A DNA stretch of 64,000 nt from Diadema antillarum (GCF_040938485.1 NW_027270917.1:5890001-5954000), one strand, 5' to 3'. Shown: positions 26,101 to 50,277, numbered from the stretch's first letter. Notes: a model not told the origin generated them from the sequence alone. Program-made: numbers and translations.

Positions 26101-27864
26101 GAGGGATCTTCTTCACCTTATCTTTTCCTTCAGTGTTGCCTGGATGAATGCCTGCACCTTAGGAGTCGTGTAGTTCTGTTGGTAGAATTCTATCAGCTTG
26201 GCATACACCGTCGGCACAGCCATGAACAAATTCACCCTGGGCGGGTCATCGCGTAGCAGCATATCCCACACCTGTTCACATACATATGAAGAACAATATT
26301 GTTATGTAACTAGTGAGGCATGCCAAGGCTCTTTACAAAACACCATTTCCATGCTCTCAAAACTGCAAGCATACAAAAATATAAGAATTACATTTACTCT
26401 AAAGATATTAGACTTAGCTCTCTAACATGAGACATCATGCTAAATGTGAAATGAACATCAAATAAAGAGGTGCGTTATCATATTAAAACTTCTTCTGGGT
26501 CTAGCCACACTTCATCCAAGCTGATACAGTGTGAATGATAAAAAATCTGCATAATTCAGCACCATATTTTAGGTATCCATACATTCGTACAAATATATCC
26601 TATAAGACTATCAAAAAATAATAANNNNNNNNNNNNNNNNNNNNNNNNNNNNNNNNNNNNNNNNNNNNNNNNNNNNNNNNNNNNNNNNNNNNNNNNNNNN
26701 NNNNNNNNNNNNNNNNNNNNNNNNNNNNNNNNNNNNNNNNNNNNNNNNNNNNNNNNNNNNAGGCTAAATATGTATCACTTCTTTTCTCATGATGTTCAAC
26801 ACATATCAAAGGAATAATGCATTCTGCAAGTGGTATTTTACATCCAACATGATGAAATTCCTCAGTAAAACATGTCATTATTTTACCTTCTCGGCACTGA
26901 AGCTTGGCAGCATCACACACGTTGCACCACACCAGAGAGGGCACGCTAGCACATTGACTATCCCATGGACATGGTGCAGAGGAAGAACATGTAGGATGAC
27001 GTCACTGGGCGCCCAACCCCAGGATGATACCATCATCTGGATCTGAGCTTGGAGGGCACTAAAGGTGGTCAACACTCCTTTGGGTCTCCCTGTGGTACCA
27101 CTGGTGTACACCAACATGGCCCCTCGACTCTTCCACTGAGTTTCCTTCCACTTTTGTGAGAGGGCATCCATGCTAATGAGATTTTGGGACTGGCTGCCAT
27201 TGAATCTGAAGATGGATATGCTATCTTCGAGAATATTGGATGCATCACTTGAGTGGTCATCCTGGGTTTCCATTCCAGGGCTAGTCTCAGAAAGGTAATT
27301 ACTGCTATGGGTGAAGGCATCTTCATCAATGAGGATGTAATTGATTTCATGTCTCTCCACAATGGGCAGGATCTTTGGAGCCAAGTCTGCGGTTGATATC
27401 ACCAGGGAAGTCTGTGAGTCCTCTATGACATACTCCAGTTCCGACTCGGGGTGCGTCTTGCAGAGCGGTACGGCCATTCCCCCACTCATCCACACTCCCC
27501 ACTGGGTGACTGTGTACGCCACATTATTGGGACACAAGAATGCCACTCTCTCGCTGTTGAGAATGACGCTCGACCCCCTCCTCCTGAGTTTTGTGTCCCT
27601 CTTGGCATTGCAGAGGATGTGACGTGAAAGCACTCTACTCCATCTGATGATGTCCTCGTACATGTATGATCCGTTAGAATCAACAATGGCTGTCCTCTCA
27701 CTGAAACCCTCTCTAATAGCTTGGAGAAAAGGTGTCCGAACTGCACTGAACTTTGAGGCATGTCTCTTTAGGCACAGCTGAGCACACTGGAAATTTCTGG
27801 TGGAACATGAAGCGAGAAGCTTTAAGCTCCTGAGTGGCCCAAGGCCCAGGTGATGAAGAATCAT
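20191..27864 (-). CDS. ACSF3: Malonate--CoA ligase ACSF3, mitochondrial acyl-CoA synthetase, 5 coding exons, ~621 aa
   Basis: Exons 27864-26887, 26271-26117, 25610-25465, 21516-21298 and 20558-20191, with GT-AG introns and consistent phases. Adenylate-forming motifs [47 protein letters not shown] and [11 protein letters not shown] are present, plus ACSF3-type [10 protein letters not shown] and [11 protein letters not shown]. The basic N-terminus resembles a mitochondrial presequence. Confidence 0.93.
21588..22772. mobile_element. pogo/Tigger-like MITE split by the Helentron-like insertion
   Basis: Left end TA|CAGCGAACTC (21588) and right end GAGCCCGCTG|TA (22772), with GTTATAAC subterminal motifs on both halves. 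Confidence 0.5.
21641..22643 (-). mobile_element. Helentron/DINE-1-like non-autonomous element, family 1, complete
   Basis: Sub-TIR ATGCCTC(C/T)GCC at both ends with a local inverted partner, a (GGAA/GGAC)-type tetranucleotide repeat, terminal stem-loop GTCGC-CATA-GTGAC followed by CTAGTTT, and no TSD. A second copy starts at 62339. Confidence 0.7.
23855..25260. mobile_element. 1.4-kb non-autonomous TIR element of unassigned superfamily
   Basis: ~37-bp TIR ATATGTGACC(C)GCGACAACGGTTTCAGGCAAAAGTCG at both ends and no transposase ORF. Confidence 0.75.
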
Positions 27865-38301: not shown

Positions 38302-39637
38302 TCATTTCATTGTCATGGTCATCGAAGAACAGAGAATTACCTTGTCGTTTTGGTCAATAAGTCGAGCCTCTCCGTAGAAAGTTCCCTGCGTAAATATCAT
38401 TGATTGAACAAAAAAAAAATAACCATTACTGAAAAATGATTATGATAACCATAATGACATATTGGATAGTACAACGTTGATACTAAAACAACGAGGAGAA
38501 AATCGAAGAGCAAAATGGTGATGAGGAAGAAACATGAATCCTTGTTGGTTCGTTATGCAGAGAACTTGGTGACCAAGTGATGGCATGGTGACTGTTTTGA
38601 ACCTCTTAGTTTCCGCCCCTTCAAACATAAAAGAATACATAGAGTCAGTATCTACTACTGACTATGGCACCCATGTAACCTTTTCTTAGTTTGCCTTGCC
38701 ATGATTGCAGACCTTTGACGTCAAAAACAAACAAACGAACAAACGACCAGACTTGATTCTTGATGTTCTCTTTTGTTTTTCAAATGCATGTCCCAACAAT
38801 TCTCTTCAGAGGTTCGACTGAAAAAAGCAGAGAAAAGAGAGATTGCCTGATTATAGAGTAGATTCTTAGGGAAACTTTAGTAATTTCGGCATACTCGTAA
38901 AAATAAAACCGATAAATTTAGCTGTTCCCCGCACGTCTCAAGACCTCGATTGAAGCAATTGAAAAAAAAAAAAAAAAACCAATGTGCAAATAGCAAAGTT
39001 CGCATGGACCTAATCTCTCCCAGGATAGAGTTGAGAGATAGCGAAATGAGGGACACGATTATCATGTACACCACGTGTTCACAGGTCACGAAGTCATGTT
39101 GGACCCTTAGTGGTCTTCGTGAAGGGCAGTACACTTTACACTAATTGTCTTTAGAATACAATGCAGTAACTCCATAATGCTTAGCAGAATGGGATCGTTT
39201 CACAGAGGTGGTCCTTAATAAAAGGAGAGCGATTGAATTGCGTAGTATATAAAGAAAATGATACAAAAAAACACAGAATTGCTGATAGCAATTACGTTGA
39301 GCTTGGACAAAGTGAAGTACTGATCATTAGGTGTATAGTCGCAGAATATATACAAGTACCATGACACACTAATGCTGATTATCATCCAGAAGTCCAATAG
39401 TAATCGATTAACTTCTGACGCCCTCAACGTTACTGAATTATGTGAGTTGAAATCTGTTTTACGTATTGTCATGTTTCATCATCGGGTGATGCTCGTTGAC
39501 TCCGAAGATTCGTTAATCCCCCCAAAATTAAATAAGGTTCGTTATTCGAATGTTAGTTATTCCAAACACAGAAATTCCCTATACCTAAATGCTCTCATAA
39601 ATCCGAAATGAAAAATAGGCCGTTGATCTGAACATTT

Positions 39638-39675
<38 letters not shown>

Positions 39676-42516
39676 TATTCCAAAGGTTCGCTATTTCGAA
39701 GGTTCATTACTCTGTAAATCAAAGAAAAGGTTCGCTATTCCGAGAGCTTGTTAATCTGAAACGAAATAATAAGGTTCGTTATTCCGAAGGTTTATTGCTC
39801 AGAAAATGAAATATCTGAGAAAAATATTGAGTTAATTATTTAGCGTGGAAGATGAATGGGGCATATTAATGTGCACTATTATATACTACACTTGAACATG
39901 TTACCAAGTAACGCGGGGTAGTAACCCTTTTATTTTACGTAGGCCTATAATCGTGTTCAAACATGCATCACCACTGGACACAAACGGATACCAGTTGCTA
40001 TTGGCTGTTTTCGTAATCACGTTGAGGATGCAATACTTTCTGTTTTCCTTCGGGGTCACTGACCCCAGCCTGTTCTCCATTTTTCCATATGTAGGCCCTA
40101 TACACATGACATTGTGTGTTAATTGCTTTGGAATAACGTGCAAAACAAGTCCTTTCATCTGTGTGTGTTCTCTATAAAAGAAAACACAAACACAAGAAAA
40201 CAGACATCTTTGTCGTGATACATGCAGAGTACTGAGTATAAGAAGATTGCGCTGCTGTTTTGTAAGTCACGGATGTGGATATAAACGGAAAATTATATGT
40301 AACCTACCTTTGGAACTAATGCAGACAGGTGCTGCTCTCTTACATAGTACTGATCTCCTGCGAAAGTGAAGAAAAGGATTATATTATAGTTAGAGATTAC
40401 TATTTCACAAACACACTTGATCACGGTATTATCATAGGATTTTATTGATACATTATACATCAGGAGTAACTCAAGTGGTTCCTTTAAAGAAAGCTTCAGT
40501 TTTCTTATTGATTTCATATCAAAGGAAAATCACATGAAGATCAGTGCAGATTCCATGGGATATTTGTAAAATGATGTCATCATCACTTCTGCCAATTTGA
40601 GTATGTGGGTATAACTGCGATTAATACCAGTGTCTTATAAAAGTTTTTATTTCAGACTTTCTTCTGTAGAAATAAAACTAACTTCAACTTGAATATCGTG
40701 TGAAATTTCACTTCAATCGCATCTTGCTCTTCATTTATATTTTACACAAGAGCACTGACATGTCATCTGAGTATACAAAAGTGAAATCATTTGATTGTGC
40801 AGATGTGATTATGGACAAAAGTGAACAAGTACCGTTGAAAATGGGAATACAGATTGTAGTATACAATGACCTTCCATTTCCTCATTGCTTTTACTGTAAC
40901 AGCACGGAGGCTCATGTCAAATTATGCTACTTCCGTTTACAAAAAGAAAAACAAAATGCAGGAAACTTGAGTCCTTGGCCCATTTGCAGTGATGGGGAAA
41001 ATAAGGTTATGAATAATAACACGAAAAACATTAAGAAAACAACTCATACGATCGAATAGAGAAACAACACAAGGTCGCCATTTGAAATTCAACTTGGGGC
41101 TTTTGAAAGCTTACTCGCATTAATAATGTTCAGTCACCGTTATAGTTATCTGTACTGGGGATTGTCCCGACTTTAATCAAAAGCTAGGACTATCATTCAT
41201 TGGTGATGCTTTCTTATTAGAAAAGTGAGTTTGACTGATAAGAGGGCAAAGAGACAGTATTATACCGTATGTTCCCCCCCCCAAAAAAAAAAAAATATAT
41301 ATATATATATAGTGAGACCCTCTGCAATGATAACTTTAAGAATAGTGAATCAATCCAAATACAGTTTCAGGGTATGAAACTATAACTTATTACCCTGTCT
41401 TTTCTGTCTTTTCTCATTTCTAAAAGCGCTTAGAGACTTGAATGTAATTTGCGCTCTATAAAAATGGTTTATTATTATTATTACCCACATCTTACCGAAA
41501 ACCCCATCCGATTTGGTTCAGTGGTCAAAGAGACCCTGAAATAGCATTCAGACAGTTTTATCACATTGGAAGTTATCAATGCGAAAATCCGATTGTATTT
41601 TTCTTTTTTTCTTGGGGGGGGGGGGGACATACTGTATAGCATACCTTTCGCTATGGGACACTTGAAGAAATCCCCTTCGGTTTCTAAGTCTCCGAAGTCA
41701 AACGTGTTGCCGTAGAAATGCATTTTGTTGTACTCGATGCTCACCTCGGCTTTTCCCATGACAACATCGTATTCTGGAAAGAAATATGGGGAGGGGGATC
41801 AGCGAAAGTTAGCCTTGATTAGAAAGCTTTTATCATCTTTGCCACAGCTCATGTCATTTCCACAATCACATAGGAATCATGAATCTATGTTCGCCATATT
41901 TTTTTTTCTAACATTGGCTACTTAGTATTGTTTCAAGAGGTATAGGGATATTACTTCAGAAAAAGTGTTGTAAATGCCAACAGTGTCAAGCTAAATTTGA
42001 GGTGCACTTGGAAAGGGTGATAAGATACTATAACTGTTTGGTTGATGATAATTAAGGACAAAGCGAAGNNNNNNNNNNNNNNNNNNNNNNNNNNNNNNNN
42101 NNNNNNNNNNNNNNNNNNNNNNNNNNNNNNNNNNNNNNNNNNNNNNNNNNNNNNNNNNNNNNNNNNNNNNNNNNNNNNNNNNNNNNNNNNNNNNNNNNNN
42201 NNNNNNNNNNNNNNNNNNNNNAGAGGACCGGGATTATAATGCCTTGTAACGCACTTTGAGCACTGCTCATATCTCATGGTGAAAAGGCTCTATAAAACAT
42301 TAAACAATATAAACAATGACGATAATGATGCCTATTATTAGTATCATTACCAATTTAATTCTAAAATTATTCACGCAGTGATAATAATCAGTCATGATCA
42401 CAATCATAGTGCATTTGTCAAAACAAATTTTGGATGGCAAAATCGTGAACGCGGGTTGGCGGTGCGGTAATGACGTTACCAGATCGGAATGAAAACTGCA
42501 AAACAAGTCTTATCAC

Positions 42517-42548
<32 letters not shown>

Positions 42549-42814
42549 GGAGAAGGTTGCAACATAAATTTTGTGCACATCGTGTATGCGTAATAGTACA
42601 GTGACCCTCATGCAAATCAATTCACATAGTCACTATTTCCTTGAGCTAGGGATATATAGAGTAGCGAGGATGTGCTCTGTAGGAATACAATACAATGCAA
42701 AACTATACATTGTAGTTATTATTGTCTGTGGTCGTTCCCATGCACCTGCATGTTTCTTGTTGACGATACTGTCAATATGTCATAAGGGATTGATACGTTA
42801 TCATAGCATCAATC

Positions 42815-42861
<47 letters not shown>

Positions 42862-45800
42862 CGTGTATAAATTACATGATTAGACGTCTACCCATCTATT
42901 CATATGTTTCAGATCCATCTTCCAATTATGCCCATCTCTCTGTGATAAGACTTGTGTTGCTATATATCTATCTGTCTGTCTACATATGTAAAATTTTGTG
43001 TCCGACCCTGCTATTTTACTGCCTGCTGAAGTTAGCACGAAAATATGCTGATTTTTTTTTTTTTTACTTCATGCTTTATACAACTATCTGGTGATGAGAA
43101 TTGCCTTGATAATATTATATACATGTATAGTGCTACGAATCTCTTTATGTGCTGTACTGTTGAGAGACATTGTGATATAGAGAGAAAAGCGTTATTGTCG
43201 AAAACTTGCCCTAAGCTTCACAATATGAGGGGTTATTATTTCCACTATAGATTATTACAGGAATGGCATCAGAAATGGCATGCAGTGACCAATTCACACG
43301 CCCCTCATGGATAACCTAATCACTCCAATGTATGTTATTGCCCACTCATGGATCGAACGGAGTCGGGTCATTTTTTGATTTGCTCCAATTTTCTTTTCTT
43401 TTCTTTTCTTTTACACACCTGGTGAGGTGAAGAAAATATATCACATCTATTCAATTCCATCATCCTTTTATGTGTTAATTTGTCAAGAGGATGTTTGGGA
43501 TATGAAAGGGGTTCTTCGGTTATATACACTGACCATTTACATTGAGGTGTGAAGAGAGACGTCGATCAAGCCAAGTAATAATTATACTGACCTGTTGTTT
43601 ACACATGTATTCATGGAGAATCGAAATCTAATCCCATCCATTCTCACCCTATTCGGCAAGCTTGATATACAATGCAAATGTCATCAACTTTGTACCGTTC
43701 CAACGACACTCTCACCCTTAAAAATGTTTTTAAAAAATGAAAAGTTGATTGATACGATTATATTGCAGAGGAACCATCGTTTTTATATTGGCGCTCTTTG
43801 CCTTTCAGTGTAAATTTGTAACTATTTACTTTAAACTGTCAGCATTCGTCATTAAAGTTCAAGTTCATTGACATTTACTTCCATCAAATATGAATATAAT
43901 ATAATTACAAGTAACATGCGGTCAATTTGAAAATCCTGGGGCACATCTCTAGAAGAATACATGTTATATCTTCTGATTCATTTCGTGTTATGTTTGACGA
44001 AAAAGAAAGAAGGAATGAAATAAATGAAATGAAATGAAATGAAATGAAATGAAATGAAAATGAAAGAATTGTTACCGTATAGTTCAATCGTATATTCATT
44101 GAGCTACAGTGTGTTGTAAAGCTCCATATGGCATGATCACTGAGACAACAATGGTAGCCATTATTTTCATGGAACAGGCTCTTAATCCTGCTAATTAATC
44201 TCCGACTGAACTGAACCGATTAATGGATGACCTTTCCTTTCAAGATGAGCCGATCGTCTGGCACTTCATTATCTTGTCTTATCTCTGTCTCTGTTGATCC
44301 TTGATACTTCTTGTTAACAAACGTCAACCTACTACCCACAGACACCTTGTGGAATGACCTCACGTGAACAGAACATGATTGTTTCAACTACTAGTAGATT
44401 ACGAGTGCTTTTAAACATGGATAACGATAATAATTATGAAGATGAAAATATATGTCCTTTTCTCCCACGAACACACATGGGTGTGGCATCGTACCCATCT
44501 ATAGCTTAATCGATGTTTGCAGTACGCAACATTAAATTGATGATTTATGTTACAATTCATGTGTGAAAATCTGGGCATCAGAAATTTATTTCCTTTTGAT
44601 GGGAGGGGGTTAAACTAATCTATTGATGATTTATATTACGACAACCTTTTTTATTATCATTCATCAGATTATGTTTTACAATGAAGCGCACATGCGTGAA
44701 TGTATTAACACAGCAGTGAAAGTACTATTCTGCCATCACCATCAGCAATGAAATTGCTGCTCATTTAATATCAATATCATTTCGAATTCTTACCTGCCGT
44801 GGTGTCTACGAGAATATCAGTCTGAACAATTTTAGCGTCAAAGGCTATTACGTTTTTTCACCCAAGATTCATTCCGTTTCAATCAACAATTGCTATTATT
44901 CCGTACAGTCTACAAGAATCTTCAGCTTATTGAAGGAGGCAGACTTAACCAGAAGAAGACGACATTCTTAAGTCTTCATTATCAAGCAATCGTTAACCCT
45001 TTATCACCGGCGAAAAAAAAAAATTGAGTTCTCTGTGCAATGGAAGGACTTAATGGGGGTCTCAGAATCTCGCACAAGGAAAAGGCAAACAATATCATAA
45101 TGCAGTCAAACCTGCCTTAGCGGTCACCTGTCTATAGGCGGCCACCTGTCGTATACAGCCACTAAAAACAATTCCCCCGAGAGAACAGCCATGTACGCGA
45201 TCATGTCTACAGCGGCCACCTGTCTATGACGGCTTGTGTTTGTCTCCCTTGGGTGGCCGCTATAGACAGGTTTGACCGTGTAATTTCTTGTATCCTTACC
45301 TAGAGTGGTGTTGAAGATGATGACGTTCTTCAGACCTCCATTATCCTCATCGGGCAAGAGAAGGACTTTCCCCACGACGGGAGGGTCCTCATCATCTGAA
45401 ATACAAAGGAGAGATTTGGTTGCCTTCATTTTGTCAGCCAATTGTCGTGTTTAAACACGTTATAGAACAAACAAGTAGAATTCGACACAATGAACTGGCT
45501 TTCATATCATGTAGACAGAGTCTCACCCGGAAAGGGGAATGACAGAAGTTTAATCAGAATCAAAGATGAAATACTGCTGTTATGAAAGGTTAAAATTTCA
45601 CACGTTTTCACCGCATAGCAATATTGGCTGTGACCCGTGACACACGCAAACTTCCCCACGTCTCTTATTTTGGTTGTGGTCGACCCACATCTGTACTAAA
45701 CTTCCTATACCTGACATGAAATCAAGGAGAACAAGTTGTGCAGCCTTCTCGCAAAGTCATTGTGTAGTATTGTAATGAGTATGGCCCAGAAACTGCAGAC

Positions 45801-48800
45801 GACGTATACGGGGAAAGGGGTTGTGACACTAGTCTTACTGCACAATTTATCGACCAAACATGTCTATAATATTGTGCAAACATGAAGAAACAAAGAGACA
45901 AACAAACCAAGGGAGAGTTGTGAGGTGACTTACGGCATCCTCAACTCTTTCCCCTTTCTATGCATATCATAATGGTTAAAGCCCATTGCATATTATCACT
46001 ATCCGGTGAAGACGTGCCTGTGTGAAACTGAAAATTATAGCTTAATTTCTTATTTCATGCCTATTTTTGATGAATTTTTTAGAGTTCTGCTCGCCTTTTT
46101 TTTAAACTCTTTTCAACAGGGTAAAACCTGAAATATATAAGTTTGAAACCTAATCTAAACACTGGATGATTATACACTATTAATTGTGCGAACATGTTTT
46201 GCTTCATTGTATAGAAATCAAGATAATTTAATTGCAACCAACGATTGATGACTGATAAAGAATAACACCAAACCCATCGTTACACAGCAAACGTATCTGT
46301 TAAACAACTGCACCGAATGACGTGGTGGATGTGGGAGTGATAACTATGAGTGATACAGTTTTTAGTGTGGTAACTGGGCAAAGAAATAGCTGCAATACAT
46401 CCGAAATATACGTTCAATTTCGATCACATTTTATCACATGAACTCAAATTTAGTTCCATTGATATACAATATAATATCTAAATTTGAGGCTCATGATTAT
46501 AAAATCTGAAAGGTTTTAATCTGTATTGGAAAAATCAATTAGACGATCAATGAGCATTTCTAATTATTGAGGTTTGTTGGCAGTACAATGTATAGGCGTT
46601 TATGAGGCCATCCGGGGTTTTGACATAAATGTCACTTGTCTCAAATGGCAACTGCATATCTCCGTTTTATACAAGCAGTAACTGATGAAGTATAGTGTAA
46701 AATATATTTTGTTTCATATCTTATGTTTATGGAAGAGTCAGTCGCTCATATCGAAGCAAAACAAAATAAGACATTTTATCTCTCATAATCATCACACGGG
46801 GAGCAAATTAATGTTGAAATAACGTACTATGGATCTCCATGGTAACAATAGCTCCCTTCCGACGCGTATCGCTATTATAGTGAGCTTGATGAAATTACCA
46901 CAAATGTTCTCCAAGTCAGTGCATCTTATATACAGAGGCCCAGTCACTAAAATGTCGCATGACATTTAGATTGAATAACGGATAAAGTTCTACGCTAAAC
47001 GGATGTTGAATATAGGCCGGCAGACATTGTTAGCTCAAGGATCTGACAAAATATGCAAGAGAAGACAACAGACGATGACGCTTCATCATCTCTTTGCCAT
47101 GTTAAACAATAGCAGNNNNNNNNNNNNNNNNNNNNNNNNNNNNNNNNNNNNNNNNNNNNNNNNNNNNNNNNNNNNNNNNNNNNNNNNNNNNNNNNNNNNN
47201 NNNNNNNNNNNNNNNNNNNNNNNNNNNNNNNNNNNNNNNNNNNNNNNNNNNNNNNNNNNNNNNNNNNNNNNNNNNNNNNNNNNNNNNNNNNNNNNNNNNN
47301 NNNNNNNNNNNNNNGTTTGAAAGTAAACAGCTGACGAGACAGAGGAGGCATCATTCTTAATGAGCTAGAGACAAGGGTGCTATAATTAGTATATTTACTA
47401 GGTCTGTGATTCATGTTTGAGTCTTTAATGTTCATGCTTCGTTTTAGCCTCATTTAAAGGATGTCTCTGCGAAACGTTGAACCTTTTCCACTCTATTTAA
47501 TTTGTAATTTTCAAGTATTTTGTGAGATACTGGATGTTAAACAGTATAGTTTCCTTCTTCATCGTGCGGTGGTCAAAGAGGTTGCCTTCACTCACGGCAG
47601 ATATTATATAGTGTTTTCATGCCAAGAACTGACCGCCATTATATAATTTGGTGAGAGGCGGCTTTTAAAGTCTTCAACGCAGCCTGGGTTAATTGTTGAT
47701 GACCGGCACATCTTGAGGCGAGTAACTATTTCTAATCCATGGCCGAGCTACCGTAATTGATGTTTTCCTGACCATTCCATGTATGACTGCTCTGAATGCC
47801 CTCTTGATAGTTGCGAAACTTGAAGCATGCACCATGATGATTTTCTTTTCGCGCATGGGTATAGCAGTTTTCTTTTCAATGTTGAATGCAGCATATTATA
47901 GATACTTCATTCAATCATATTGTGCAACCTACAGCTCCTTCACCCCCCACCCCTTGGTCTCCCTCCCTCCCCACTTCTTCAGGTGAACAGTCTACCCCAT
48001 CACGGTCCATTTAAGGATGAACCTCGTATTACTATTACCATACAATATAGAGTAAGACCTACATTATTCACCAAACGTTCATTATGAGGCATAAACACAA
48101 CTCCGTCGGGGCCACAAGATTAGGACGTGTATGCCTCACTGGTTTGGCCCAATTTGAATATAATGCTACGACTTACTATTTCCACAAAGACGTCTAGGCA
48201 TTGACCCTGTACACTCACACCTTCGAGTTGCCCGTTAACACGGTTCGGCGTCTCGTTCAGTGCTCTGTAAATTTTGTCAACAACTTTGACGTTAATGCAT
48301 GATGCCCGTGACTCTACGGGGGGGGGGGGGGGGGGGGGGGGGGTCGCTTAGAGATTTTCATCGCGAGTGAGAGTAGTAGCGATGAAACCATCGCACAATA
48401 TGGAAACTTTTCATGATGGAAGCGTCGAAAGACTCACCATCCACACCACAGGATGCGCTATAAGGATAACGTTATCCACATAAGGAGGTAGTGTGACGCC
48501 TTATATTGGAGGCAATGTGATACCTCCTTGGTTATCCGTAATCCCAATAAATTTGTACAACGTTCAATGTGACATGCGAGTGCCTTGAGGTGCTGTATGA
48601 CCCTACAGCGACGATGTCAAGAAGAGACCAAGAGCATCTCCACGGAGGAGGAGAGGACAGTTGGGTCATACCATGTACTTCCTGATTGTGCTCTTGAATA
48701 ATTGATAAGTCATGTGCATTCAATTTCTACTGAATTATTAACAAATTTGGTCAACTAAAAGAACGTCTGTACAAGGGAGTGGGAGAGAATAGTTTTATAT

Positions 48801-49746
48801 TACGGATTTACTTACTGATTGCTCATGAGTGATTGATAAGTCAAATTGATCGAATTCCACGTCTATTAGATTATTACGAAATGCGAAATAGAAAAATCTG
48901 TGAAAATGAAATACAAACAGATGCATTTTTTGTTGTTCTTTATCAATAGGGTTTATAATTAATTACAAACTGTACTAAAGGGCCCCTGTACGCTCCGTGA
49001 TAATACCTACCACAATACGCCCAGATGTTGCCCAGCTCCACGAAGTCGTTGTCTTTCACCCACTTATCCCAGTCAAAGAACTTGATACCATGACGACCAC
49101 GCCCATTGTGACGTACTCCATCTCCCTCTCCATCCTCCACCTCCCCATCTCCATCCTCTGCGCGTTCTCCACCATTGCCACCTGCATCACGTAACTTCTC
49201 GTCATCCCCGTCTTCCTTCTCAACATCTACAATAGGTACCTTCTCCTCATGATCTGCCACACCCACGCTTTGCTTATTGGCTTGCCCGGCACCCTCTACC
49301 TCACCATTGCCTTCATCTTCGATAGCATTTGCATCTGCTTCTGCATCACCGCCATCTGCATCTGCATCATCACCCACAGCTTCTACTTGTTTAATGTTGT
49401 CGCTCTCTGCCTTTGCTGGTTCCTTCGTTGTCCTTTCCTTGATCGTATTTATCAAGGCATCTTTGTCAACGTTCACTCCTTGGTTCTCGTCCTCCGCTGA
49501 TGCGATGACTTTGTGTGCCTTGAGATGGTGAAATCTGGGTTTGGCCTCGATCGGTTGGGCTTTCTGCTCCATTCGGTTAGCTGCCAGCAGGTCTTCGGCC
49601 GATTCATGGTTGAAGAACTTCAGATACAGACCTAATGTCACACATACGGTGCACAGCACCCCGATCAGCAACCGTTTGCCTGACATCCTCCTCCGCGAGA
49701 GACCAAACACAGCACGAATACATCCAGTTGTTTGCCAAAGCATCAT
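38302..49746 (-). CDS. Type II membrane-anchored protein with acidic stalk and C-terminal ML (MD-2-related lipid-recognition) domain, 5 exons, ~364 aa
   Basis: Exons 49746-49011, 45395-45300, 41773-41645, 40357-40308 and 38385-38302 splice GT-AG in phase (1,1,1,0). The joined C-terminus reads IWAYC-DDDEDPPVVGKVLLLP..VIIFNTTLEYDVVMGKAEVSIEYNKMHFYGNTFDFG..FKCPIAKGDQYYVREQHLSALVPKGTFYGEARLIDQNDKVILCSSMTMTMK*. This follows the ML beta-sandwich pattern (C..CPxxxG..PxGxYxxxxxLxDxxxxxxxC). Family recognised by eye, no search run. The start may instead be the ATG at 49686. Confidence 0.75.
39500..39830. repeat. Degenerate GGTTCGTTATTCCGAA minisatellite interrupted by (TG)n
   Basis: About 8-10 recognisable variants of a 16-nt unit. 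Confidence 0.6.
44022..44068. repeat. (AAATG)n pentanucleotide microsatellite
   Basis: Direct reading. A related (AATTC)n tract lies at 14366-14400. Confidence 0.9.
45103..45278. mobile_element. pogo/Tigger-like MITE
   Basis: TIR CAGTCAAACCTG / CAGGTTTGACCG with internal GCGGCCACCTGTCTA repeats. It lies 21 nt from the exon-2 donor of the ML gene. Confidence 0.7.
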
Positions 49747-50277
49747 ATAACACCGACCAGCCAACACAAATGCGAGCGCGGGGTTTGATTCGGACGCAAC
49801 GCGCGCAGTGTACAAAATCGTCTGCTCTTGTGTTGTGATCAGCTGGATCACACGTGCTGCTCTGCTGCCGAGTACCAGTACCTAGAAACCGCAGCTCAAG
49901 CTTTTCCCTGCTTGCGGGTCAGAAATGTCAACAATCAGCCCATGTACAGCAGATACTTGGGGTCGGCAAACTTTTGTCGCATCGACCGATCGGGGAATGC
50001 GAGAAGCCCGTGAATATACCTTTGTAGCTCTTCGCGGAAGAGGATGTTCTTTCTCCCAGGAACAATTGGGATTTCGTTATTCAGTGATGGCCGACTGGTT
50101 TGCAGCTGCAGGAATCAGCGTGATGTCTTCGCGATCGAATCTAAGAGCAAAGAGAAGTGGAGAGCGGCTCAAACGGGTCCTTACGATTAGAACTGCTCGA
50201 CTTTTCTGTCATCTTATCTCTGAGATGAAGAGCAAACAGACTAAAATGAAGGAGGCCCGGGCAATAGACATACTTAA

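What the first reader, a model, noticed from the sequence alone, without database searches (positions are those of the whole stretch)
38302..49746. Membrane-tethered ML lipid-binding protein built like a Golgi glycosyltransferase
Seen: five exons splice in frame into a short basic tail (..LSRRRMSGKR), one hydrophobic segment (LLIGVLCTVCVTLGLYL), a ~190-aa Asp/Glu/Gly/Ala-rich low-complexity stalk and an ML-type domain with an NTT sequon. Established: characterised ML proteins (NPC2, MD-2/LY96, MD-1, GM2 activator) are soluble, signal-peptide proteins that carry lipids or present them to receptors. Inference: here the lipid pocket sits on a long flexible type II tether with the tail-TM-stem layout of Golgi enzymes. 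It could act as a luminal or cell-surface lipid shuttle or sensor that reaches across to another membrane or receptor. The ORF track misses the domain because it is split over four small exons.
Basis: partly seen in the sequence, partly recalled or inferred. Interest (0 to 1): 0.78.

Follow-up and report, generated by a model that had tools for sequence, protein, structure and literature searches.

The report
Membrane-anchored NPC2-like lipid-binding protein gene
This is a real, expressed sea-urchin gene for an NPC2/MD-2-type (ML) lipid-binding domain that is fixed to a membrane by its own N-terminal anchor instead of being secreted, and it belongs to a conserved, so far uncharacterised family found from jellyfish to amphioxus.

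Summary
On the minus strand, five exons with canonical AG/GT sites (49746-49011, 45395-45300, 41773-41645, 40357-40308, 38385-38302) join in frame to 364 aa. Both assembly gaps lie in introns. Spliced contigs of public runs carry the exon 1-2 joint and the exon 2-3 joint.

The C-terminal 138 aa are identical to those of an annotated Diadema setosum protein. That protein matches Pfam ML (PF02221, 34 bits) and folds like yeast NPC2 (Z 9.7), MD-1 and GM2 activator.

The N-terminus is a signal anchor rather than a cleaved signal peptide. It has a basic tail and about 20 hydrophobic residues ending in aromatics, followed by a conserved NH-P-P-x-E-x-L-x-A-N type motif with no small-x-small cleavage site. 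In relatives the segment starts as late as residue 68.

About 35 proteins share this layout, from echinoderms, a hemichordate, amphioxus, molluscs, a bryozoan, a priapulid, a centipede and cnidarians. They form one clade apart from signal-peptide ML proteins, and all are annotated as uncharacterised.

The acidic stalk is specific to some lineages (12-169 aa) and evolves fast. The "long reach" idea is therefore not a family feature. AlphaFold confidence figures suggest the ML domain sits near its own anchor. Lipid binding and localisation remain untested. This is a new variant of a known kind, of moderate interest.

The parts
49672..49746 (-). Start codon (ATGATG) and 25-aa basic cytosolic tail, with 6 K/R and no D/E in the 15 residues before the anchor
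   Evidence: The same ATGATG and frame are kept in D. setosum, while indels break the frame upstream of it. The S. purpuratus tail ..PRRKMAGKR resembles ..SRRRMSGKR. A contig of run X5 reaches 49807, so both ATGs are in the mRNA. The NCBI model of D. setosum starts at the later Met (49686).
49612..49671 (-). Hydrophobic signal-anchor / transmembrane segment, residues 26-45, ending in the conserved Y-L-x-F-F
   Evidence: Kyte-Doolittle maximum 2.1. AlphaFold helix 2-25 of P0001 has pLDDT 89-97. The family median uncharged run is 19 aa, against 15 in signal-peptide ML proteins.
49564..49611 (-). Conserved juxtamembrane motif and helix (N-H-E-S-A-E-D-L-L-A-A-N-R..; family consensus F-N/R-H-P-P-x-E-x-L-x-A-N)
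   Evidence: Alignment A1. AlphaFold helix 30-43 has pLDDT 93-96. There are 0 nonsynonymous and 2 synonymous differences to D. setosum across TM plus motif.
49078..49563 (-). Acidic, Gly/Ala-rich disordered stalk or loop of about 160 aa
   Evidence: Composition. pLDDT is 36-60. dN/dS is 0.46, with a 21-nt indel against D. setosum. The length varies from 12 to 169 aa across the family.
49011..49077 (-). Family-specific W-D-x-W..V-x-L/I-G helix and the first Cys of the ML domain (C245); end of exon 1, donor GTAGGT
   Evidence: W199, G212 and C218 of P0001 are invariant in A1. The exon 1-2 joint is seen in a spliced contig.
47116..47314 (.). Assembly gap inside intron 1
   Evidence: The intron is spanned by the spliced contig joint 49011-45395. 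The letters were not looked up.
45300..45395 (-). Exon 2: ML strands 1-2 with the family-invariant N-x-T sequon (N274, NTT)
   Evidence: Contigs in X1 and X5 cover exactly 45300-45396.
42069..42221 (.). Assembly gap inside intron 2
   Evidence: Loose ends at 45300 continue into the exon 3 sequence. The orthologue is colinear with no extra residues.
41645..41773 (-). Exon 3: central ML strands up to the C-P-I-A-K motif. Gly305 replaces the first Cys of the middle disulfide
40308..40357 (-). Exon 4 (50 nt): G-D-Q-Y-Y-V-R-E-Q-H-L-S-A-L-V-P-K, the conserved P-x-Y/L-L/V-P-K-G loop region
   Evidence: There are two synonymous differences to D. setosum.
38302..38385 (-). Exon 5: last two ML strands with the closing Cys (C356) and the stop codon

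Best explanation
The locus is an intact, transcribed five-exon gene of a diadematid sea urchin. It encodes a single-pass type II membrane protein with these parts in order:
- a 25-aa basic cytosolic tail;
- an uncleaved signal anchor of about 20 residues;
- a conserved juxtamembrane helix;
- an acidic disordered segment of about 160 aa;
- a short W-x-x-W helix;
- an N-glycosylated, disulfide-bonded ML (NPC2/MD-2-type) beta-sandwich facing the lumen or the cell exterior.

It belongs to a conserved animal family of anchored ML proteins. The closest characterised relative of that family is fungal Npc2, also called 'PG/PI transfer protein'.

Shown: gene structure, transcription and splicing of exons 1-3, the ML fold, family membership, the one-clade position, and purifying selection on the anchor and ML domain.

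Inferred: the topology, from the positive-inside rule, the length and position of the hydrophobic segment, the absence of a cleavage motif, and a sequon and cysteines on the C-terminal side.

Most likely mechanism (inferred, about 50%): the ML sandwich takes up a sterol or other lipid between its two sheets, as NPC2, GM2 activator and MD-1 do. Because it is tied to the membrane, it works at the luminal or outer leaflet of its own membrane. There it would lift a lipid out or hand it to a neighbouring membrane protein or enzyme. The conserved anchor-juxtamembrane module would set the position or bind the partner. The acidic segment would be an ambulacrarian elaboration of the linker, not the core of the mechanism.
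For: Gene model and frame.

Spliced contigs at the E1-E2 and E2-E3 junctions, and coverage restricted to exons in run X1.

Orthologue P0001 with PF02221 at E 3.8e-8.

Fold:
- Foldseek top 35 hits are all ML proteins (MD-1, yeast NPC2, MD-2, NPC2, GM2AP, Der p 2), E 2.6e-6 to 3e-4.
- VIA-align gives yeast NPC2 Z 9.7, rmsd 3.1 A, 131 of 143 residues aligned.
- The family profile matches yeast Npc2 at E 5.5e-12 and MD-1 at 6e-4.

Family:
- 58 phmmer hits among 1.84 billion representatives.
- 33 full-length members with the same tail, TM, motif, linker, W-helix and ML order are aligned in A1.
- All anchored members lie on one side of a branch with SH-aLRT 100 and length 1.23, against 15 signal-peptide ML proteins.

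Anchor rather than signal peptide:
- Uncharged run median 19 aa (up to 22), starting at residue 1-68. The N-flank carries 2-6 K/R and 0-1 D/E. The run ends in aromatics followed by H-P-P.
- The signal-peptide relatives start at residue 2-4 and end in A-x-A-like sites directly before the ML domain.
- AlphaFold gives a 24-residue helix.

Selection: 0 nonsynonymous and 7 synonymous changes in the W-helix plus ML domain, 0 and 2 in TM plus motif, and dN/dS 0.46 in the stalk.
Against: No experiment or dedicated predictor (SignalP, DeepTMHMM) was available, so topology is inferred.

In echinoids a Lys interrupts the hydrophobic run (17 + K + FF). T-L-G at its end could in principle serve signal peptidase.

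Lipid binding is inferred from the fold only. Sequence identity to any characterised ML protein is 10-20%. Diadema has lost one Cys of the middle disulfide (G305) and S. purpuratus has lost both, so the pocket region may behave differently.

RNA evidence comes from assembled contigs of runs whose RNA status is a guess (X1) or unknown (X5). Exons 3-4-5 junctions rest on the orthologue's annotation, canonical sites and conservation.

The compartment is unknown.
Confidence: 0.6

Rival explanations
1. The hydrophobic segment is an ordinary cleaved signal peptide. The mature product would be a secreted, soluble, acidic protein with a C-terminal ML domain, for example an extracellular lipid carrier or a calcium-binding matrix protein.
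For: If translation started at the later Met, as in the NCBI model of D. setosum, the N-terminus M-S-G-K-R plus 17 uncharged residues looks like an n-region and h-region. T-L-G before L-Y-L could fit the -3/-1 rule. All characterised ML proteins are secreted. The stalk is strongly acidic, with net charge -23.
Against: Across the family the segment is 19-22 residues long and ends in Y-x-x-F-F followed by H-P-P, with no conserved small-x-small site. It begins as late as residue 43 (P0019) or 68 (Aplysia P0018). The residues right after it are among the best conserved in the protein. The upstream ATG and tail are conserved in D. setosum, and a similar tail is present in S. purpuratus. The sister signal-peptide ML proteins look quite different.
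Confidence: 0.1
2. The anchor is real but temporary. As with many Golgi type II enzymes cut by SPPL3 or stem proteases, the protein would be cleaved in or just after the membrane segment, possibly at the conserved motif. The working form would then be a shed, soluble ML protein carrying an acidic propeptide-like extension.
For: The tail-TM-stem layout is the one whose members are commonly shed (PMC8918473, found). The conserved motif lies exactly at the luminal end of the helix. Several members have di-basic residues after A-N, such as R-R, R-K-R and K-K. The long disordered stalk is accessible to proteases.
Against: AlphaFold confidence figures suggest that the anchor helices lie in a fixed position relative to the ML domain (pTM 0.84 in the oyster member, 0.64 in Diadema despite about 140 disordered residues). 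That fits a working membrane-bound unit better. The di-basic sites are not conserved, and Diadema has A-N-R-M-E. There is no direct evidence of cleavage.
Confidence: 0.2
3. The ML domain does not carry lipid. It would be a protein- or glycan-binding module, acting as an MD-2/MD-1-like subunit of a receptor such as one of the many echinoderm TLRs, tethered in cis.
For: MD-1 and MD-2 are among the best structural matches (Z 6.2-7.9; profile E 6e-4 to MD-1). Related beta-sandwiches such as the Wzt carbohydrate-binding domain and RhoGDI also appear lower in the lists.
Against: The closest relative by both sequence and structure is yeast Npc2, a sterol and lipid carrier. MD-1 and MD-2 themselves bind lipid. 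The family also occurs in cnidarians, bryozoans and priapulids, and nothing links it to TLR expansions.
Confidence: 0.15
4. The model is an annotation artefact or a decaying gene. Either unrelated open frames have been stitched together across assembly gaps, or this is a pseudogene.
For: Two gaps lie within the span. Four exons are very short (50-129 nt). The middle disulfide is incomplete.
Against: All splice sites are canonical and the frame is open over 364 codons. Two junctions are present in spliced contigs. The same protein is annotated in D. setosum, with only synonymous changes in the ML exons. Orthologues exist in four echinoderm classes.
Confidence: 0.02

Closest known systems
Fungal Npc2 / 'phosphatidylglycerol-phosphatidylinositol transfer protein' (S. 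cerevisiae Npc2, PDB 6r4m/6r4n) and the amoebozoan PG/PI-TP-like ML proteins
   Same: It is the best match by family profile (E 5.5e-12) and by structure (Z 9.7, 131 residues). It shares the D-x-C...C-P-I/L motif, the P-x-G-x-Y loop and the closing Cys. The nearest non-anchored sequence relatives are about 150-aa ML proteins of this type, such as Filamoeba P0028.
   Different: Those proteins are soluble, with a short cleaved signal peptide directly before the domain. The protein here has a cytosolic tail, a signal anchor, a conserved juxtamembrane motif, a linker and a W-x-x-W helix. The anchored family is separated from them by a long, fully supported branch.
Animal NPC2, GM2 activator, Der p 2 / Der f 2
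   Same: They share the ML beta-sandwich (Pfam PF02221; Z 6.2-7.4) and the terminal disulfide, and they act in the lumen or outside the cell.
   Different: Identity is only 12-18%. Those proteins are free carriers that diffuse between membranes and partners. This one is covalently tied to a membrane.
MD-2/TLR4 and MD-1/RP105
   Same: An ML domain is held at a membrane surface, and the structural similarity is Z 6.2-7.9.
   Different: There the ML protein is secreted and held non-covalently by an LRR receptor. Here the domain has its own anchor, and no LRR partner is known.
Type II Golgi-resident glycosyltransferases (layout only)
   Same: Both have a short basic cytosolic tail, one N-terminal membrane segment of about 20 residues, a disordered stem and a folded luminal domain.
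   Different: There is no catalytic domain here. The stem is acidic and poor in Ser/Thr/Pro (6%), not the usual glycosylated stem. Golgi residence is untested.
NPC1 N-terminal domain (analogy)
   Same: A luminal lipid-binding domain is tethered to a membrane protein by a flexible linker and takes or gives lipid at the membrane surface.
   Different: The fold is unrelated and it is part of a 13-TM transporter. The comparison rests on general knowledge and was not tested here.

Membership tests
ML domain superfamily (Pfam PF02221, E1_DerP2_DerF2) | Sequence match to the family profile above the curated threshold | tested here: met
   P0001, identical to the window protein over the domain, scores 34.2 bits against a cut-off of 22.7, E 3.8e-8, over 3-131 of 133 profile positions. 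Single exons alone give no hit.
ML domain superfamily (Pfam PF02221, E1_DerP2_DerF2) | Two-sheet immunoglobulin-like beta-sandwich superposable on solved ML proteins | tested here: met
   The AlphaFold model has pLDDT about 95 over residues 190-337. All top Foldseek and VIA hits are ML proteins, with Z up to 9.7.
ML domain superfamily (Pfam PF02221, E1_DerP2_DerF2) | Conserved cysteines: a terminal pair linking the first and last strands, plus an internal D-x-C...C-P pair | tested here: inconclusive
   The terminal pair is present (C245, C356). The internal pair is incomplete in Diadema (G305, C316 kept) and absent in S. purpuratus, but present in the other family members.
ML domain superfamily (Pfam PF02221, E1_DerP2_DerF2) | Binds a lipid in the cavity between the sheets | not testable with these tools
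   No coordinates or assays were available. Lipid binding is inferred from the fold only.
Characterised ML proteins as a class (NPC2, MD-1/2, GM2A, Der p 2): soluble, single-domain, cleaved signal peptide | Short N-terminal cleaved signal peptide directly before the domain | tested here: not met
   The hydrophobic segment is 19-22 aa long, is preceded by tails of up to 67 aa, ends in aromatics plus H-P-P, and is followed by a 12-169-aa linker. No dedicated predictor was available.
NPC2 orthologue group | Groups with NPC2 and has the same length and architecture | tested here: not met
   Identity to bovine or human NPC2 is 16%. The architecture differs. The family forms its own clade next to amoebozoan-type ML proteins. 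NPC2 sequences themselves were not in the tree.
Anchored ML family defined here (echinoderm, hemichordate, cephalochordate, mollusc, bryozoan, priapulid, myriapod and cnidarian 'uncharacterized' proteins) | Order of parts: basic tail, about 20-aa TM ending Y-x-x-F-F, F-N/R-H-P-P..E..L..N motif, linker, W-x-x-W..V-x-I-G helix, ML domain with invariant N-x-T | tested here: met
   The window protein has every element. It is nearest to D. setosum P0001 and S. purpuratus XP_030831835, within an echinoderm clade with support 99.
Type II (N-in, C-out) single-pass membrane proteins | Positive-inside charge bias, an uncleaved N-terminal hydrophobic helix, and glycosylation and disulfide signs on the C-terminal side | tested here: met
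   The N-flank has 6 K/R and 0 D/E, and the C-flank 1 K/R and 3 D/E. This rests on sequence only, with no experiment.
Golgi-resident type II proteins | Localisation to Golgi cisternae | not testable with these tools
   Only the layout and a rather short membrane segment are suggestive.

The most novel reading that the evidence does not exclude
The window shows one member of an old, animal-wide family of membrane-anchored NPC2-like proteins that no paper found here describes. The family was not seen in vertebrates, insects or nematodes among the hits. In this reading, a conserved transmembrane-juxtamembrane module holds the ML pocket against the luminal or outer leaflet. One polypeptide would then do what NPC2 with NPC1, or MD-2 with TLR4, do as two. 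That would be a new way of extracting or presenting membrane lipid. In ambulacrarians the acidic insert would add a second property, such as calcium binding or spacing.
Probability: 0.3. Interest if true: 0.7.

Novelty: new variant of a known kind. Interest (0 to 1): 0.55.

Why it matters
ML proteins (NPC2, MD-2, MD-1, GM2 activator, mite group 2 allergens) are textbook examples of small soluble lipid carriers. A conserved clade that carries its own membrane anchor shows that this fold is also used as a fixed, membrane-bound device.

The clade has a juxtamembrane motif as well conserved as the domain itself, and it occurs from cnidarians to cephalochordates. It gives a defined set of uncharacterised genes to test in tractable animals such as sea urchin, oyster, Clytia and amphioxus, for roles in luminal sterol or lipid handling or lipid sensing.

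It also matters for annotation. These genes are labelled 'uncharacterized' or, misleadingly, 'PG/PI transfer protein', and at least one model (D. setosum) probably starts at the wrong Met.

Tried and rejected
- Pfam on single exons gave nothing because they are too short.
- My first guess for exon 4 (about 38640-38580..YSFMFEGAETKRFK..) could not be joined in frame to exon 5 with a good donor. The orthologue and the family alignment place exon 4 at 40357-40308.
- The word-indexed protein search found only the D. setosum orthologue with exon 1 or with the ML region. With the family alignment it was swamped by low-complexity words, though it added Clytia. The exhaustive phmmer search was needed.
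- phmmer of the domain alone against PDB sequences was only marginal (E 0.21). The family profile was needed.
- The language-model and structure atlas searches gave only generic ML clusters for the whole protein and nothing usable for the N-terminal 70 residues.
- No tandem paralogue lies in the window.
- Six literature searches and two paper look-ups found no description of an anchored ML protein. Subscription journals are not covered.
- Earlier notes of this scan held nothing for this place or topic.
- Model coordinates and PAE were not available. The suggested closeness of the juxtamembrane helix to the ML domain rests only on pTM and pLDDT arithmetic and on the residue ranges of structural alignments.
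- The D. setosum locus L001 was used for exon comparison only, not to read the stretches that correspond to the gaps.

Full report
**1. What is in the sequence**

The gene lies on the minus strand. Exon 1 opens with ATGATG at 49746 and runs to a GTAGGT donor after 49011. The other exons are 45395-45300, 41773-41645, 40357-40308 and 38385-38302. Each follows a pyrimidine-rich ...CAG acceptor, and each internal exon is followed by GTAAGG, GTATGC or GTAGGT.

Joined, they give 1095 nt, or 364 codons, with no stop. My own first guess for the fourth exon, near 38600, could not be joined in frame and was wrong.

**2. The gaps**

The unread stretches 47116-47314 and 42069-42221 lie in introns 1 and 2.

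I laid contigs of four public runs on 45200-49950.
- Run X1 is a relative about 91% identical, with high depth on exons only. It holds a contig that joins 49011 directly to 45395, skipping 3615 letters whose ends read GT..AG on the minus strand.
- In X1 and in X5 (0-2 differences, probably the same species) the contigs covering exon 2 continue beyond 45300. The letters there are the reverse complement of the start of exon 3.
- X5 also covers 49516-49807, so the mRNA starts upstream of both candidate ATGs.
- X2 and X4 cover intron 1 evenly. They are genomic DNA of a relative.

The frame across both gapped introns is thus shown by spliced sequence, and no gap letters were filled. The exon 3-4 and 4-5 junctions were not covered by this single call. 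They rest on canonical sites, the orthologue and conservation.

**3. Orthologue and domain**

Exon 1 finds one protein in 5.8 billion: an 'uncharacterized protein' of Diadema setosum (P0001, 337 aa, 89% identical).
- It is colinear with the window protein and 100% identical over the last 138 residues.
- Differences are confined to the stalk: about 17 substitutions and a 7-aa indel.
- The annotated start also differs.

P0001 matches Pfam ML (PF02221) at 34.2 bits, E 3.8e-8, nearly end to end.

I made an AlphaFold model of P0001 with a 33-sequence family alignment.

| Residues of P0001 | Feature | pLDDT |
|---|---|---|
| 190-337 | beta-sandwich (ML domain) | about 95 |
| 2-25 | helix | 89-97 |
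| 30-43 | helix | 93-96 |
| about 50-190 | no structure | 36-60 |

Foldseek ranks only ML proteins at the top: MD-1, yeast NPC2, MD-2, bovine NPC2, GM2 activator and Der p 2, with E 2.6e-6 to 3e-4. The second-look aligner gives yeast NPC2 Z 9.7 (rmsd 3.1 A, 131 of 143 residues), MD-1 7.9 and ant NPC2 7.4. A profile of the family matches yeast Npc2 at E 5.5e-12 and MD-1 at about 6e-4. The domain alone was only marginal.

**4. A family, not a one-off**

An exhaustive phmmer search with the domain against 1.84 billion representatives gave 58 hits at E <= 0.001. About 35 of them share one layout:
- a basic N-terminal tail of 0-67 residues;
- a hydrophobic segment ending Y-(L/V)-x-F-F;
- a conserved F-(N/R)-H-P-P-x-(D/E)-x-L-x-A-N stretch;
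- a linker of 12-169 residues;
- a W-(D/E)-x-W...V-x-I-G helix;
- the ML domain, with invariant first Cys, N-x-T sequon, C-P motif, Gly and last Cys.

Named members are listed below. Every name is 'uncharacterized', 'ML domain-containing' or an automatic 'PG/PI transfer protein'.

| Group | Species |
|---|---|
| Echinoderms | S. purpuratus, Antedon, Amphiura, Acanthaster |
| Hemichordate | Ptychodera |
| Cephalochordate | Branchiostoma |
| Gastropods | Aplysia, Babylonia, Arion |
| Bivalves | Crassostrea/Magallana, Pinctada |
| Bryozoan | Bugula |
| Priapulid | Priapulus |
| Centipede | Strigamia |
| Cnidarians | Rhopilema, Clytia |

In a maximum-likelihood tree of the domains, all anchored members fall on one side of a branch with SH-aLRT 100 and length 1.23. 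Four N-terminally incomplete entries and two over-long models that look fused fall with them. The other side holds 15 ordinary signal-peptide ML proteins of about 150 aa, such as Filamoeba. The echinoderm sequences form a clade with support 99. No vertebrate, insect or nematode member was seen, but only about 30 hits could be named.

**5. Anchor or signal peptide?**

No predictor was available, so I compared the two groups.

| Feature | Anchored family | Signal-peptide relatives |
|---|---|---|
| Uncharged run | median 19 aa (13-22) | median 15 aa |
| Start of run | residue 1-68, median 16 | residue 2-4 |
| Before the run | 2-6 K/R and almost no acidic residues | M-K or M-N |
| End of run | bulky aromatics, then H-P-P or H-G-P | A-x-A-like triplets |
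| What follows | conserved motif, then linker | start of the domain, directly |

Prolines in that position are unfavourable for signal peptidase. A segment that begins at residue 43 or 68, and whose downstream neighbour is as conserved as the domain itself, is a signal anchor.

The invariant sequon and the cysteines put the ML domain in the lumen or outside the cell, which gives type II topology. This is inference from sequence.

In echinoids the run is 17 residues, then Lys, then F-F. That is the weakest case, and it leaves about a 10% chance of cleavage.

**6. Start codon**

The D. setosum genomic locus (L001) carries the same ATGATG and the same 20 codons upstream of the annotated Met, with one conservative change. 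Further upstream, indels destroy the frame. The S. purpuratus protein also has an extended tail ending ..P-R-R-K-M-A-G-K-R, like ..S-R-R-R-M-S-G-K-R here. The 364-aa reading is therefore more likely than the 337-aa one. The topology is the same either way.

**7. Selection**

The table compares the window with D. setosum.

| Region | Nonsynonymous | Synonymous | dN/dS |
|---|---|---|---|
| W-helix plus ML domain | 0 | 7 | 0 |
| TM plus motif | 0 | 2 | 0 |
| Stalk | 18.5 | 10.5 | 0.46, plus a 21-nt indel |

The anchor module and the domain are the constrained parts. The stalk is a tolerant spacer.

**8. How it probably works**

The stalk in Diadema is about 161 aa. Its composition is 27% D+E, 14% G and 12% A, with net charge -23 and only 6% S/T/P. 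It is therefore not a mucin-like glycosylated stem.

Across the family the linker can be as short as 12-30 residues. The conserved design thus keeps the ML domain close to the membrane.

AlphaFold of the 204-aa oyster member gives pLDDT 92 and pTM 0.84 for the whole chain: membrane helix, three short helices and the ML domain. For Diadema the pTM of 0.64 is more than the ML domain alone could contribute. My estimate for the domain alone is about 0.45 of 337 residues. Structural alignments to MD-1 and yeast NPC2 also include model residues 33-47.

Together these figures suggest that the juxtamembrane helix packs near the ML domain. The acidic segment could then be a loop rather than a rope. I could not see coordinates or PAE, so this is a lead and not a result.

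My best reading is a membrane-bound NPC2-like lipid handler working at the luminal or outer leaflet of its own membrane, with the anchor-motif module setting position or binding a partner. Confidence:
- about 0.85 for the architecture;
- about 0.5 for lipid handling.

Shedding of the ectodomain, as for many type II Golgi proteins (PMC8918473), cannot be excluded.

**9. Comparison with the known, and novelty**

The fold and superfamily are known, and automated pipelines already tag these proteins with the ML domain. Three things are not described in any paper I could search: the covalent type II anchor, the conserved juxtamembrane motif and W-helix, and the existence of an animal-wide clade with this design.

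I file it as a new variant of a known kind. It is not an NPC2 orthologue and not an MD-2 homologue in the functional sense. It fails the 'soluble, cleaved signal peptide' feature that all characterised ML proteins share.

**10. Verdict**

Interest is moderate (0.55). The finding is solid and gives a testable, unstudied family, but function and localisation are still inference.

Noticed in passing
window 26881-27864 (-): A long open exon encodes an AMP-binding enzyme, an acyl-CoA synthetase-type protein (PF00501, E 4.8e-35). It lies downstream of the ML gene on the same strand, and the assembly gap 26625-26760 lies just beyond its end.
   Followed up: partly
window about 45204-45276 (intron 2 of the ML gene): A short element has summed contig depth above 20,000 in the genomic runs X2 and X4, with many contigs ending at its borders. 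It is a very high-copy interspersed repeat of these urchin genomes.
   Followed up: no
window 41645-41773 (exon 3); alignment A1 columns for C278 and C289 of P0001: Echinoids have lost the internal ML disulfide. Diadema has Gly where the family has Cys but keeps the C-P cysteine, now unpaired. S. purpuratus has lost both. Crinoid, brittle star and sea star keep both.
   Followed up: partly
window about 49332 (exon 1, stalk): There is a 21-nt (7-aa, G-G-D-A-E-A-D) length difference between the window species and D. setosum. Runs X2 and X4 show the same deletion, so the acidic region changes by in-frame indels.
   Followed up: partly
L001:1941-2000 (D. setosum locus): The NCBI model of the D. 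setosum orthologue starts at the third in-frame Met. The upstream ATGATG and 20 codons are conserved, so that model is probably 20 residues short.
   Followed up: yes
P0033 (Pinctada, 949 aa) and P0058 (Strigamia, 787 aa): Two over-long database models carry an ML domain that falls inside the anchored clade. They look like predictions fused to neighbouring genes rather than new architectures.
   Followed up: no
window 39641-39700 and 42520-42560: Simple repeats lie inside introns 4 and 2: (TG/CA)n, and (GA/TC)n next to a G-run. They are ordinary microsatellites.
   Followed up: no
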